A DNA stretch of 57,795 nt. It comes from Guillardia theta CCMP2712 (Eukaryota; Protista; Cryptophyta). Made by a program: the position numbers and the translations under genes. This document shows, one piece after another, positions 10,201 to 13,816 of the stretch. The notes below the pieces were generated by a model. The model made no database searches and was not told the origin of the DNA. It saw only the letters and a program-made list of their open reading frames with translations. How positions within the stretch are numbered: position 1 is the first letter of the stretch; every line of letters begins with the position of its first letter. The DNA lies in contig NW_005434468.1 in NCBI RefSeq assembly GCF_000315625.1, positions 1 through 57,795 on the forward strand, given 5' to 3'.

Positions 10201-10756
10201 CTCACCCTACCCGAGCACCTGTGAAACGATTGGATGTTATACCACCTCAAACACCCTTCACTCTCTCACCCTCATTTGATACTAGTGTCTCACTTATAAA
10301 ATCGAATCGTTCTCACCGGCATGATTCGAGTCCCCTGCCTCCCTCCTTCATTCGACTACCCCTACCCGCTATTTGCCTACAACCCGAAATCTCCACCTAC
10401 CCACACTCTGTCATTCAATATCAAGATTATGGGTGGGGCGGCTTCCACGCACTGCACAAAATGCCAGGCAAGGAGCAGCTGCGATGAGATGCTGTTACCT
10501 TCAGTTACATGCTTGATGATGGAGATGTTTCCTTTGCTCCCCCGCATCTGATCCTTCCATCATTCAACTCCTTTCTTGGCGGCTCCTTCACTTCCTCCCA
10601 ACACTTTTCTTGACCTCCTGGCTTGTGTTTCTCCAGATCCCGTTCCAACCTTATACCATCGACAGCACAAAATGCGTAATTTGAATATCTTCTAGTAGGC
10701 GTCATCTGACTGCGTGTGTTTTACGTTTTGCCGTGAATTGCCATGTTATTGTTCGG

Positions 10757-13700
10757 ATGGCGGTAAGCATCAGTCTGTGAAGCGTATGCTCGTTCAGGGG
10801 ACGATAAACTGACATTTTCTGTGTTTTTTTCGGTTTCTCATCGGATGGGTTGTTGGTTTGTCCGGTCAGATGGTAAGTGATGATAATGAAATATGCGGTC
10901 AGGGAACGATGGGACTGACATGTTTTGGGCAAATTCCTGGTTTTTCCTTGCTTGCATGGGTTAAATTCGTCTTCATAGGGAGTAAGTGTCATATCATATG
11001 ATGCGCTCAGGGGATGATTGTACTGACATTTATTTTGCAAATTCCTGGTTCTCCCTTGCTTACATGGATTGAATTCGTCTTCATAGAGCGTAAGTGTCAT
11101 ATCATATGATGCGGTCAGGGGATGATTTGCTGACATTTGATTTTGTATTTCTCTGTGTTTGGTGTGGGATGGATGGGTTGCTGGATCGGATAGCCGGTAA
11201 GTATCTTGATCACAACATGCGGTCAGGGGACGATTTGACTGACATGCAATTTGCAATTTGATCGGTTATTGCTTGGATGGATGAAACTTGGGCCTGATAG
11301 TATGTAAGTGACGCTTATGAAACATGCTCTCAGGGGATGATTGGACTGACATGTATTTTGCAAATTCCTGGTTTTTCCTTGCTTGCATGGATTAAATTCG
11401 TCTTCATAGGAAGTAAGTGTCATATCATATGATGCGGTCAGAGGATGATTGGACTGACATTTTCTTTTGTGTATATGTCGGTATTTGCTCGAATGTACTG
11501 TGGATGGCGCGGTATAGTCGGTAAGTGACGATGATGAAAGATGTGGTCAGGGGGCGATTGGACTGACATGTATTTTGCAAATTCCCGGGTTTTCCCTTGC
11601 TTGCATGGATTCAATTCGTCATCATAGGGAGTAAGTGTCATATCATATGATGCGGTCAGTGGACGATTCGAGCTGAAATATTACAGGCTACTTTCGATGC
11701 TGGAGCCGATGGGAAGTGTCAGACTTGCAAGAAGCTCGAGAAGGATCACTACACAGAATACAAGTTCTGCTACGTAAGCCTCTCAATGAGCCGCTCAGGG
11801 AATGTTTCGCTGACATTGGTTTTGCTTCTTGTCTGTGTTTGGTGTCGGATGGATGGGTTGCTGGATCGGATAGGGGGTAAGTATCTTGATCAAAATATGC
11901 GGTCAGGGGACGATAGGGACTGACATGTATTTTGCAAATTCCTGGTTTTTCCTTGCTTGCATGGATTAAATTCGTCATCATAGAAAGTAAGTGTCATATC
12001 ATATGATGCGGTCAGGGGACGATATGGCTGACATATAATCTTGGGTTTCTTTTGTTTTCGCTCGGATGGACTGGTGTGATGGAACTGGATAGTATGTAAG
12101 TAATATCTCGATTGAAACATGCGGTCGGTAGAGAGTGACATTCATTTTGCGTTTTTTGGTATGTCTTGATCAACGAATGGCAACATCTGGCATGGATCTG
12201 CTAGTGCTGCGTAAGAAATTGACATCATCACATATTTTCCTGCTGATCTGACCTTGTTTTGATTGCAATATGCAATGGGAAACTCACAGAATGTAAGTCA
12301 TCGATCATGTTTCAAAGCACATGGTCTGTAGAGGTTTTATTTGTATTGATTGGTTGACTCAGTGCGCCAAATCTAAAGGATGGTCCGGGTATGATGAGGT
12401 GTATGATTGGTTTGAGTGATGCGCTTGAGTCTCCTGTGACGTGTGCTGTTGGTAGCACGGGTGCAGACATTGCAAGAAACGGCTACAAGAGAAAGAAACG
12501 AAGAGTGGTGAACAGAATGCACAAGAACTGAAAATCAAGGAAGAGCAGCAGCGCAGAGAGAGGGAGGAGCAGCAGCGCAGAGAGAGGGAGGATCAGCAGC
12601 GCAGAGAGAGGGAGGAGCAGCAGCGCAGAGAGAGGGAGGAGCAGCAGCGCAGAGAGAGGGAGGAGCAGCAGCGCAGAGAGAGGGAGGAGCACGATGTTGC
12701 TTCCCAGGTCCGTTATGCCATGTCTTGTATCTCGATGATGTGTGAATCCCTTTTTTTTCTAAGTTGGGTCAAATCCCATCGTGGAACTTCGAGTCCTTCA
12801 CGGGCCTGCAGCAGATCGGCTCAGGCTCCTTCAAGCTCGTCTACAGGGCTCGGTGGCAGCAGCCGCATGGCAGCAGCGCTGACGTGGCAATCCAACGAAT
12901 CCGAGGCAGCGGACCCACTGGGAGGAGAGAAGAGTTCGAGCAGGAGGTGAAGATCTTCCACCAGCTGGGCCTTCACCCCAACCTCCTTCGCCTCCTCGCC
13001 ACCAGCATCGAGCCGAGCTCCGGCGACTACTGCCTGGTGACTGAGTTTGCTTCCAAAGGCTCTCTCGATGGGATCTTGTCCAACTTTGCCGAGGAGGAGA
13101 AGACGATGAGTCTGCTGGTGCAGCTGCAGGTGGCGAGGCAGATCTGCGACGGGATGGTGCAGCTGTCGCTGCATAAGGTTGTGCATCGGGACCTGGCGGC
13201 GAGGAACGTGCTTGTGTTCAGCCTGGACCCGGAGGATCACCTGGCTGTCAGCGTCAAGATCGCAGACTACGGGCTGTCCATCATGGCCTCGCGCGGGTAC
13301 GGGGAGAGTAGGGCCGGGAGCGTGAGCACGGCAGGCTCGACGGCTCGACCCGTGCGGTGGATGGCGCCGGAGAGCATGAGACGAAGAGAGTACTCGGAGA
13401 TGAGCGACGTGTGGGCGTTCGGGGTGACCATGTGGGAGGTCTGGACGTACGGAGAAGTGCCTTACTGGGCCATCACAGATGACGCTGAGGTGGGACCCAA
13501 GGTTGTAGATGGCGAGCGACTAGCGGCTCCTTCAGCATGTCCGCCTAAAGTTTATTTGATCATGCAAAAATGCTGGAAGGAGAAGAAGACCGAGCGACCA
13601 AGCTTCAGCCAGCTACAGAAGCTGCTTCAGGAGCAGTACGACGAAGCCGTCGAAGTTCGCGGCCAGCAATGCGTCGTCTGCATGGAGCGAAGAGCTGAAT

Positions 13701-13816
13701 GGGCGCTGATCCCCTGCGGTCACAAGTGTCTGTGTGAGGACTGCAAGGAGGGAGCGACGTCGAGGCCATGCCCGATGTGTCGCTCGAGCGCGACGAACAT
13801 CTACAAGATCTACTAG
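10757..13816 (+). CDS. Microexon-encoded N-terminus, Cys-rich region, coiled coil, tyrosine-kinase-like kinase and C-terminal RING finger (18 predicted exons, all introns phase 0)
   Basis: Exons: 10757-62, 10870-72, 10979-81, 11087-89, 11194-96, 11301-03, 11410-12, 11518-20, 11628-30, 11687-773, 11874-76, 11984-86, 12093-95, 12205-10, 12290-92, 12363-98, 12456-707, 12764-13816. They join as MAMGSPYESGATFDAGADGKCQTCKKLEKDHYTEYKFCYGKYCCNCAKSKGWSGYDEHGCRHCKKRLQEKE...(EEQQRRER)n...LGQIPSW... Kinase motifs: IGSGSF, HRDLAARN, DYG, PVRWMAPE, SDVWAFG. RING: CVVC...PCGHKCLC..C...CPMC. Confidence 0.8.
10763..12292 (+). other. Array of ~105-nt related introns separated by 3-nt microexons (appears as a ~108-bp tandem repeat)
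   Basis: Each unit reads AG|NNN|GTAAGT, then a GCGGTCAGGGG box, a CTGAC branch site and an AG-free tract to the next acceptor. Confidence 0.85.
12540..12690 (+). repeat. 24-bp coding tandem repeat (EEQQRRER)x~6
   Basis: gaggagcagcagcgcagagagagg repeats, in frame with the kinase. Confidence 0.9.

What the first reader, a model, noticed from the sequence alone, without database searches (positions are those of the whole stretch)
10757..12292. One-codon-per-exon gene: twelve 3-nt microexons spell the N-terminus of a kinase
Seen: every unit of the apparent 108-bp satellite contains AG|NNN|GTAAGT. The triplets are ATG(10870), GGA(10979), AGC(11087), CCG(11194), TAT(11301), GAA(11410), TCG(11518), GGA(11628), then an 87-nt exon (11687-11773), then GGG(11874), AAA(11984), TAT(12093), a 6-nt TGCTGC(12205) and AAT(12290). 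None is a stop, all introns are phase 0, and the chain joins in frame through 12363-98 and 12456-707 to the kinase-RING exon: MA-M-G-S-P-Y-E-S-G-ATFDAGADGKCQTC...FCY-G-K-Y-CC-N-CAKS... Known: isolated 3-nt exons and Schistosoma micro-exon genes exist, but I know of no run of eight consecutive single-codon exons. Inference: any subset can be skipped without a frameshift, giving single-residue combinatorial variation of a signalling protein's N-terminus. Gene predictors would miss this.
Basis: partly seen in the sequence, partly recalled or inferred. Interest (0 to 1): 0.97.

Follow-up and report, generated by a model that had tools for sequence, protein, structure and literature searches.

The report
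Single-codon exon array, kinase-RING gene
The apparent 108-bp satellite is a chain of look-alike introns separated by exons only one codon long that most likely encode the start of a kinase-RING protein in the alga Guillardia theta, a gene layout found in no paper searched, though no RNA could be examined for this particular gene.

Summary
Observation confirmed. Twelve AG-NNN-GTAAG sites and one 6-nt site lie at the stated coordinates. The spliced chain reads open for 488 codons into a kinase plus RING exon.

The organism is Guillardia theta. The same layout recurs at about 20 loci: at least 180 three-base exons, 8 six-base ones, and almost none of 1, 2, 4 or 5 bases. No triplet is a stop, where 8-17 were expected.

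The best evidence is a transcript contig from a JGI sample. It carries, in genomic order, all 13 single-codon exons of a sister gene (contig C228), and the genome holds no contiguous copy.

Two junction or exon searches and one protein search were blank. Support here is therefore comparative.
- The only in-frame AUGs upstream of the kinase Gly-loop are 10757 and the microexon 10870.
- The 87-nt Cys exon, the TGCTGY exon and the AAT exon are conserved as protein in paralogs.

Combinatorial skipping is arithmetically possible but unevidenced. The codons are 5-10 times more variable than their near-identical intron flanks.

The scan has found this architecture before on other pieces of this genome, some with RNA support.

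The parts
10649..10762 (+). First exon (5' end not mapped). It holds a short uORF (ATG 10672), an out-of-frame ATG at 10743 and the in-frame ATG at 10757, and ends ...CGGATGGCG|GTAAGC.
   Evidence: 89% identical to bases 6-120 of the paralog transcript contig L024. ATGs and their ORFs are listed. The alignment of 13 paralog first exons is.
10763..11686 (+). Nine introns: eight of 104-107 nt from the repeat family, then a 56-nt short form (11631-11686). They are separated by eight 3-nt exons.
   Evidence: Each is GTAAG[T/C]...ATGCGGTCAGGGGAYGATTGGACTGACAT..., then an AG-free ~57 nt, then YAG.
10870..10872 (+). Microexon ATG (Met), a possible start codon in the mRNA context GCGATGG.
10979..10981 (+). 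Microexon GGA (Gly)
11087..11089 (+). Microexon AGC (Ser)
11194..11196 (+). Microexon CCG (Pro)
11301..11303 (+). Microexon TAT (Tyr)
   Evidence: A cassette with identical flanks and the same codon lies in the transcript-supported array L017.
11410..11412 (+). Microexon GAA (Glu)
   Evidence: An identical cassette lies in L017.
11518..11520 (+). Microexon TCG (Ser)
   Evidence: Identical cassettes lie in L017 and L002.
11628..11630 (+). Microexon GGA (Gly)
11687..11773 (+). 87-nt exon encoding ATFDAGADGKCQTC...KFCY (a C-x2-C ... C motif).
   Evidence: Conserved in frame 0 in 8 paralogs, with the third codon position most variable (158/151/220 differences). In paralog L006 it is continuous with the first exon in the same frame.
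11774..12362 (+). Six introns (100, 107, 106, 109, 79 and 70 nt) separated by microexons.
11874..11876 (+). Microexon GGG (Gly)
   Evidence: An identical cassette lies in L017.
11984..11986 (+). Microexon AAA (Lys)
12093..12095 (+). Microexon TAT (Tyr)
12205..12210 (+). 6-nt microexon TGCTGC (Cys-Cys)
   Evidence: Seven kinase-type paralogs have TGCTGC or TGCTGT here, which is synonymous variation only. ROCO paralogs have CC-x-C uninterrupted at the start of a large exon.
12290..12292 (+). Microexon AAT (Asn), the x of CC-x-C.
   Evidence: Invariant AAT in 7 of 7 paralogs.
12363..12398 (+). 36-nt exon (CAKSKGWSGYDE)
   Evidence: After removal of intron 12399-12455, the spacing from CC-x-C to C-x2-C matches that of the ROCO paralogs.
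12456..12707 (+). 252-nt exon (HGCRHCKK...). It includes a 24-nt tandem repeat (12539-12691, 6.4 copies) coding (EEQQRRER)n.
12773..13816 (+). Last exon: protein kinase domain plus C-terminal RING finger, with the stop at 13814-13816.
   Evidence: Pfam PK_Tyr_Ser-Thr 1.4e-36 and zf-C3HC4_3 2.4e-13 on the two pieces either side of 13402-13441. ORF. Places 13402-13441 were not sent to any search tool.

Best explanation
The 10757-12292 stretch is not a satellite. It is the 5' coding part of a Guillardia theta gene for a 488-residue protein made of a Cys-rich N-terminal module, an (EEQQRRER)n repeat, a protein kinase and a RING finger.

Thirteen of its exons are one or two codons long. Each is flanked by a complete intron of one homologous family. 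That family has a GTAAGT donor, a conserved core containing the CTGAC branch site about 47 nt in, an AG-free tail of about 57 nt, and a YAG acceptor.

Inferred mechanism of splicing:
- Each ~105-nt intron is removed on its own by intron definition.
- Removal is probably sequential, because U1 on the next donor and the 3' splice-site factors cannot both sit on a 3-nt exon.
- The unusually distant branch site keeps U2 away from the neighbouring donor.

The product reads M-A-M-G-S-P-Y-E-S-G, then the 87-nt Cys exon, then G-K-Y, CC, N, and on into the rest of the protein. Translation most likely starts at ATG 10757 or at the ATG microexon 10870.

The array belongs to a family of about 20 such arrays, all at the N-terminus of kinase-RING or LRR-Roc(-TIR) signalling proteins. 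The unit of evolution is an exon-centred cassette: 3' half-intron, codon, 5' half-intron. Cassettes are duplicated and reshuffled between arrays, probably by recombination in the conserved intron core. The codon changes 5-10 times faster than its flanks.

Shown: the anatomy, the genome-wide pattern, splicing of all 13 microexons in one sister gene, and the domain content.

Inferred: that this window's exons are spliced and translated, the order of splicing, and the recombination mechanism.
For: (1) Anatomy and open chain.

(2) Transcript evidence in a sister gene. Protein P0001, from a JGI contig (L024, 1411 nt), reads ...VVIRKA-GHWFSEHFSYKPG-CCVCYYDD. Each of the 13 triplets was located in order in the C228 array between AG and GT[AG]AGT, with 14 introns of 93-106 nt removed. 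In the genome the two ends of that contig lie 1.5 kb apart and no contiguous copy exists.

(3) Exon lengths. There are 180 exons of 3 nt and 8 of 6 nt. The six chain entries of 7-11 nt all contain an internal AG and look like acceptors miscalled by the first-AG rule. Only two YAG-N(k)-GTAAGT sites have k = 4 or 5, and none has k = 1 or 2.

(4) Stop codons by frame. Frame 0 has 0 in 190 codons, where 16.6 were expected from positional composition and 8.0 from the intron background. Frame 2 has 10 in 160, where 10.3 were expected.

(5) Splice signals are the most conserved columns in 176 distinct introns (GTAAGT, the core and ATAG at 90% or more). The AG-free zone is shown.

(6) Protein-level conservation across paralogs: the 87-nt exon, CC-x-C, TGCTGY varying only synonymously, and AAT invariant. 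In L006 the first exon runs straight into the Cys exon in frame 0.

(7) In this gene frame 0 has no AUG between 10870 and a Met lying inside the kinase domain, past the Gly-loop (translation, sequence read). A functional kinase therefore needs a start at 10757 or 10870 and an in-frame chain.

(8) Kinase and RING domains.

(9) Hypervariable codon. Cassette pairs whose flanks differ by 6% differ by 48% per site in the codon, with 90 non-synonymous changes against 4 synonymous. In the 27-member cassette family, nucleotide diversity (pi) is 0.094 in the flanks and 0.53-0.65 in the codon.

(10) An independent assembly, an ENA metagenome contig (L025), is 81-88% identical to the best G. theta loci and shows the same arrays, so this is not an assembly artefact.
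Against: A protein search with the 252-nt exon and two exact-pattern scans of JGI metagenome contigs, one for the 87-nt exon and one for the 252-nt exon, found nothing.

An out-of-frame AUG at 10743 precedes the proposed start. It opens an 86-codon ORF across the same microexons. That second frame also has no stops in the arrays, although only 2.2 were expected (P = 0.08).

In most paralogs frame 0 has no AUG upstream of the conserved Cys module, so how those genes start translation is unexplained.

The statistics count paralogous, non-independent units.

Runs guessed to be RNA hold 0.5-0.65 of the sampled words of 10600-13400. By my estimate exons make up about 35% of those words. This could mean intron retention, DNA in those runs, or words shared with paralogs.
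Confidence: 0.8

Rival explanations
1. The microexons are really spliced into the mRNA but are not translated in frame 0. The array would lie in a 5' leader, with ribosomes using the conserved out-of-frame AUG (10743) as an overlapping regulatory uORF, or starting by some other route.
For: The AUG at 10743 is conserved in 12 of 13 paralogs, while the in-frame AUG at 10757 is unique to this gene. Most ROCO paralogs have no in-frame AUG before the Met of the HMCRHC/RMCQHC motif, and public models start there. The uORF frame has no stops in the arrays.
Against: Stop avoidance is significant only in frame 0. The 87-nt exon, CC-x-C, TGCTGY and AAT are conserved as protein in frame 0. In this gene no in-frame AUG lies between 10870 and the middle of the kinase domain, so a functional kinase needs the upstream start.
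Confidence: 0.1
2. In this particular gene the array is mostly or wholly skipped. It would be spliced as one long intron, or by recursive steps that discard the triplets, so the one-codon exons are relics copied from sister genes.
For: No transcript of this gene was found. Skipping any subset keeps the frame, so skipping costs nothing.
Against: All donors, branch sites, AG-free zones and acceptors are intact in every unit of this array. The sister array is fully included in the one transcript seen. The in-frame start codons lie upstream of, or within, the array.
Confidence: 0.07
3. This is a silent pseudogene or a non-genic satellite that merely resembles introns.
For: TRF calls it a 108-bp tandem repeat, and no expression was shown for this locus.
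Against: A 488-codon ORF stays open through 17 splice junctions into intact kinase and RING domains. Runs of organism A hold half or more of the sampled words of the stretch.
Confidence: 0.03

Closest known systems
Micro-exon genes (MEGs) of Schistosoma and other flatworms (from my own knowledge; tapeworm micro-exon runs are mentioned in 10.1101/2020.04.08.031872, listed)
   Same: Both have runs of consecutive symmetric microexons whose lengths are multiples of 3. The encoded residues are highly variable, any exon can be skipped without a frameshift, and gene predictors miss them.
   Different: MEG exons are about 6-36 nt, not single codons, and they make up most of the coding sequence of small secreted proteins. 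Here 13 of 488 codons of an intracellular kinase-RING protein are involved. The introns belong to one repeat family of fixed length, and the unit that duplicates is an exon-centred cassette.
Isolated 3-nt microexons in animals and plants (e.g. RPS24 with microexons of 3, 18 and 22 bp, PMC12207440; plant microexon clusters, PMC8831610)
   Same: Exons of 3 nt can be spliced accurately. Neighbouring microexons occur. They are commonly misannotated.
   Different: Those are single exons or small clusters of two or three with unrelated introns. Here there are 8 consecutive single-codon exons in this window. Sister arrays have 13 (shown in RNA) and 17 plus two more (predicted).
Introner and introner-like elements (families of near-identical introns; from my own knowledge)
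   Same: There are many copies of one intron sequence family with intact splice signals in one genome.
   Different: Introners are dispersed into unrelated genes by transposition. Here every copy found sits in tandem arrays within one N-terminal module family. Sequence linkage runs across the exon rather than across the intron. No terminal repeats or target duplications were recognised.
Recursive (ratchet-point) splicing of long Drosophila introns (from my own knowledge)
   Same: A 3' splice site is followed almost immediately by a 5' splice site, which implies stepwise removal of consecutive intron segments.
   Different: Ratchet points leave a zero-length exon and nothing in the mRNA. Here three bases are kept at each step and are read as a codon.

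Membership tests
Spliceosomal GT-AG (U2-type) introns | GT donor, branch-site consensus, AG acceptor as the first AG after the branch site | tested here: met
   All 16 introns of the chain are GT...AG. The repeat-family introns have GTAAGT and CTGAC at 90% or more, followed by an AG-free zone up to the acceptor.
Spliceosomal GT-AG (U2-type) introns | Precise removal from RNA | tested here: inconclusive
   Met for 14 introns of the sister array on C228. Not testable for this window's introns, because read laying was lost and the searches were blank.
Micro-exon gene (MEG-like architecture) | Several consecutive microexons, all multiples of 3 | tested here: met
   This window has twelve 3-nt exons and one 6-nt exon. 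Across 24 loci there are 180 of 3 nt and 8 of 6 nt.
Micro-exon gene (MEG-like architecture) | Microexons make up most of the coding sequence of a small secreted protein | tested here: not met
   Fourteen codons of 488 come from microexons. The rest is a kinase-RING protein. No signal peptide was looked for.
Micro-exon gene (MEG-like architecture) | Protein variation by alternative inclusion of microexons | not testable with these tools
   Only one assembled transcript contig of one sister gene was available, and it includes all microexons.
Introner elements | Copies inserted in many unrelated genes | tested here: not met
   All matches of the intron (56 hits) and of the two-unit pattern (83 hits) that I fetched lie in arrays of the same N-terminal module family.
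Protein kinase with C-terminal RING finger | Pfam kinase and RING domains above the curated cut-offs | tested here: met
   PF07714 scores 126.6 bits (cut-off 23.1) and PF13920 scores 50.1 bits (cut-off 27).

The most novel reading that the evidence does not exclude
The arrays may be a built-in diversification device for a family of immune- or death-type signalling proteins. Single-residue cassettes (half-intron, codon, half-intron) would be added, lost and exchanged between genes by recombination in the conserved intron core. The codons would be under diversifying selection, and alternative inclusion of one-codon exons may add isoform variety. The intron design, with a mid-intron branch site and a 57-nt AG-free tail, would then be a specific adaptation that lets the spliceosome handle 3-nt exons.
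Probability: 0.3. Interest if true: 0.92.

Novelty: new variant of a known kind. Interest (0 to 1): 0.85.

Why it matters
If confirmed by RNA for this gene, it pushes the known limit of exon architecture. There would be runs of 8 single-codon exons here, with 13 shown and about 19 predicted in sister genes, all spliced accurately.

That is a natural test bed for how a spliceosome defines an exon too short to hold U1 and the 3' splice-site factors at once. It would also show what a distant branch site contributes.

It also shows a way for proteins to evolve one residue at a time by shuffling intron-bounded cassettes. This occurs in a gene family (kinase-RING, LRR-Roc-TIR) that looks like protist innate-immunity or cell-death signalling.

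On the practical side, the two public models of sister ROCO genes recovered here (the MMETSP-derived UniRef protein P0002 and NCBI GUITHDRAFT_155797, P0003) both start downstream of the array and lack the N-terminal module, so annotation pipelines need a microexon-aware step.

Tried and rejected
A second call was blocked by the cap. No read-level evidence is therefore available.

2. The search for homologous proteins with the 252-nt exon, residues 1-40, found no candidates.

3. Exact-pattern scans of JGI metagenome contigs for the 87-nt exon and for the 252-nt exon found no matches. Those records may leave out this genome's own data.

4. The search for homologous proteins with the N-terminus of P0001, meant to survey other spliced paralogs, returned only P0001 itself and one model that starts downstream.

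5. The representative search with the kinase piece gave kinase paralogs and ENA contigs (L026, L027) whose upstream regions hold no array. This says nothing about this gene's N-terminus.

6. I tested the idea that the 3' and 5' intron flanks pair across the microexon to present it in a hairpin. The mean z-score of 180 cassettes against shuffles was -0.02, so the idea is rejected.

7. I tested whether the conserved uAUG frame is the true reading frame. It has no stops in the arrays, but only 2.2 were expected (P = 0.08), and the conserved Cys motifs are in frame 0. It is not supported as the coding frame.

8. A putative extra intron upstream of the first exon in paralogs (GTGATCG...TTTGAG) is retained in the transcript contig, and its GT is absent in this window. 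I did not pursue it.

9. An ESM Atlas feature search of the N-terminal 110 residues of P0001 scored below 0.9, with LRR-dominated hits. It gave no lead on the fold of the Cys module.

10. Paper searches for Guillardia with microexon or introner, for 3-nt or single-codon exons, and for consecutive or tandem microexons found no description of this architecture.
Full report
**1. What is in the sequence**

On the + strand, AG-NNN-GTAAG occurs twelve times, all between 10870 and 12290. The triplets are ATG, GGA, AGC, CCG, TAT, GAA, TCG, GGA, GGG, AAA, TAT and AAT. The whole - strand of the 57.8-kb window has one such site.

There is also a 6-nt TGCTGC (12205-12210), an 87-nt exon (11687-11773), and exons at 12363-12398 and 12456-12707, all bounded by AG and GT. 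Tandem Repeats Finder sees the stretch as a 108-bp repeat.

The thirteen introns from 10763 to 12204 are homologous. Twelve are 100-109 nt and one (11631-11686) is a 56-nt short form that stops just after the branch site. The full-length form has four parts:
- a GTAAGT donor;
- about 20 variable bases;
- a conserved core ATGCGGTCAGGGGAYGATTGGACTGACAT containing a CTGAC branch-site motif;
- a tail of about 57 nt with no AG, ending in YAG.

The joined chain has no stop. It runs in frame into one large exon (12773-13816), giving a 488-codon ORF from ATG 10757 or 486 codons from the ATG microexon at 10870. That exon encodes a protein kinase domain and a C-terminal RING finger (PF07714 at 1.4e-36, PF13920 at 2.4e-13).

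**2. Organism and extent**

Names attached to homologues identify the genome as Guillardia theta CCMP2712. The assembly is 87.1 Mb in 669 contigs.

One intron of the array has 56 matches in the genome. The two-unit pattern AGNNNGTAAGT...CTGACAT...AGNNNGTAAGT has 83 matches against 0 for the reversed control, spread over 18 contigs.

I fetched 23 loci and parsed them. Exon lengths and run lengths were as follows.
- There are 180 exons of 3 nt and 8 of 6 nt. The six chain entries of 7-11 nt all contain an internal AG and look like acceptors miscalled by the first-AG rule.
- Only two YAG-N(k)-GTAAGT sites have k = 4 or 5, and none has k = 1 or 2.
- The longest chain, on C308, has 17 consecutive 3-nt exons followed by TGCTGT and AAT.

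Using donors alone to define 144 units, AG sits at -5/-4 before the next donor in all 144. In 138 of them there is no other AG after the branch site. AG density is 0.08 per 100 nt there against 5.2 in the 5' half of the same introns. In an alignment of 176 distinct introns, the donor, the core and the ATAG acceptor are 90% or more conserved, while the exon positions sit at about 30%.

**3. Are such exons really spliced?**

I therefore have no read-level data. From then on I sent nothing from those places to any search tool.

Indirect transcript evidence came from the protein collection. A search with the first large exon of a sister gene (L017, on C228) returned P0001, a product called on a 1411-nt JGI contig. 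Its sequence reads ...VVIRKA, then G-H-W-F-S-E-H-F-S-Y-K-P-G, then CCVCYYDD.... That is the first exon, the 13 genomic triplets in order, and the large exon.

Walking the contig along the genome places every triplet between an AG and a GT[AG]AGT donor, with 14 introns of 93-106 nt removed. In the genome the two ends of the contig map 1.5 kb apart, and the 39-nt chain has no contiguous copy.

So the contig is a spliced transcript, and 13 consecutive single-codon exons can all be included. The tool does not state the nature of the JGI sample; I infer RNA origin from the missing introns.

For this window's own gene, three searches were blank. One was a protein search with the 252-nt exon and two were exact-pattern scans of JGI metagenome contigs.

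**4. Are they translated, and in which frame?**

Several results point to frame 0.
- Across 30 runs of microexons, frame 0 (triplet = codon) has 0 stops in 190 codons. The expectation is 16.6 from positional composition and 8.0 from the introns' own trinucleotides.
- Frame 2 has 10 stops in 160 codons against 10.3 expected. Frame 1 has 0 against 2.2 expected, which is not significant (P = 0.08).
- These units are paralogous, so the tests overstate independence.
- The 87-nt exon is conserved as protein in eight paralogs (ATFQAGAEGKC..C...C[YS]), with most differences at third codon positions.
- In paralog L006 the first exon runs directly into this exon in frame 0. The microexons are therefore in-frame additions between two coding pieces.
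- The 6-nt exon is TGCTGC or TGCTGT (Cys-Cys, synonymous change only) and the next exon is AAT in all seven kinase-type paralogs.
- The ROCO-type paralogs carry CC-[VIL]-C uninterrupted at the start of a large exon.

In this window, frame 0 has no AUG between 10870 and a Met lying inside the kinase domain. A kinase with its Gly-rich loop therefore needs a start at 10757 or 10870 and the whole chain in frame.

Two caveats remain.
- An out-of-frame AUG at 10743, conserved in 12 of 13 paralogs, opens an 86-codon ORF over the same exons.
- The in-frame ATG at 10757 is unique to this gene, since paralogs read AAG there. Most ROCO paralogs have no in-frame AUG upstream of their conserved Cys module, which I cannot explain.

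**5. How the arrays evolve**

Sequence similarity is linked across the exon, not across the intron. A given 3' half-intron is nearly always followed by the same 5' half-intron, whereas 5' and 3' halves of one intron combine freely.

Cassettes with identical flanks and identical codons occur in different arrays, in different order. For example GAA then TCG here, and TCG then GAA in L017.

The codon itself is hypervariable within cassette families.
- Pairs whose 45 flank positions differ by 6% differ at 48% of codon positions. Of the differing codons, 90 are non-synonymous and 4 synonymous.
- In the largest family (27 members, five of them in this window), nucleotide diversity is 0.094 in the flanks and 0.53-0.65 at the three exon positions.

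I read this as duplication and exchange of exon-centred cassettes, probably by recombination in the conserved core. Selection then acts on the codon. It is either diversifying selection, or selection that preserves distinct codons against homogenisation. This step is inference.

A hairpin across the microexon is not supported (mean z = -0.02).

An ENA metagenome contig that is 81-88% identical to the best G. theta loci carries the same kind of array. The layout is therefore not an artefact of this assembly, and it exists in a second genome or in an unassembled paralog.

**6. Mechanism proposed**

Each ~105-nt intron is a self-sufficient unit recognised by intron definition. A 3-nt exon cannot hold U1 pairing (exon positions -3 to -1) and the 3' splice-site factors at the same time. 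Neighbouring introns must therefore go in sequence, as at recursive-splicing ratchet points, except that three bases are kept at each step.

The array introns look like an ordinary ~50-nt intron of this gene plus an AG-free extension of about 57 nt. Compare the short form 11631-11686, whose branch site lies 9 nt from its AG. The extension keeps the branch site far from the next donor. All of this paragraph is inference from anatomy.

**7. Comparison and novelty**

The closest known things are:
- flatworm micro-exon genes;
- isolated 3-nt microexons (RPS24, PMC12207440; plant microexon clusters, PMC8831610);
- introner families;
- recursive splicing.

None combines single-codon exons, long tandem runs and one repeat family of introns. 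Five paper searches found no description, within the limits of that library.

Other agents of this scan have reported the same architecture on other pieces of this genome, some with RNA support. I treat those notes as leads. My own results on the C228 transcript and on the roughly 8-fold codon-to-flank ratio agree with them.

**8. Verdict**

- The one-codon-per-exon reading is probably right for this gene (about 0.8), but it rests on a sister gene's transcript and on comparative evidence.
- Combinatorial skipping is untested.

Noticed in passing
window 12539-12691: A 24-nt tandem repeat (6.4 copies, 97% matches) lies inside the 252-nt exon. It encodes (EEQQRRER)n between the Cys module and the kinase domain.
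   Followed up: partly
window 10743-10745 and paralog first exons (L002, L006, L009, L010, L012, L015-L018, L020, L021): An out-of-frame ATG in the first exon is kept in 12 of 13 paralogs. In this gene it opens an 86-codon ORF that crosses all the microexons and ends at 12531. A 7-codon uORF starts at 10672.
   Followed up: partly
L017, L002, L012, L013, L015, L016, L020 (ROCO-type paralogs): Frame 0 has no AUG upstream of the conserved CC-x-C module. Public models (P0002, P0003) start at the Met of the HMCRHC/RMCQHC motif and so lack the module and the microexon-coded residues. How these genes start translation is open.
   Followed up: partly
L025 1-560 (ENA ERZ930071 contig): A metagenome contig only 81-88% identical to the best G. 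theta loci carries five single-codon exons (GGA, GGA, AAT, TTT, CAA) with the same intron family, upstream of a CC-I-C exon. It comes either from a relative or from a paralog missing from the assembly.
   Followed up: partly
L019 3070-5480 (G000:C261): A block of about 700 nt containing the microexons GCG, CCA and CTT is repeated three times in tandem, with an N gap in the second copy. This is a higher-order duplication within an array.
   Followed up: no
window 10600-13400: Runs guessed to be RNA hold 0.5-0.65 of the sampled 31-mers of this stretch, although by my estimate exons account for only about 35%. Possible reasons are intron retention, DNA in those runs, or words shared with paralog arrays.
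   Followed up: no
I worked beside them and sent none of their letters to any search tool.
   Followed up: no
window 12399-12455: The 57-nt intron with the weak donor GTGTAT has an in-frame TGA. One paralog model (P0055) reads through its equivalent stretch, which suggests that model retains an intron.
   Followed up: no
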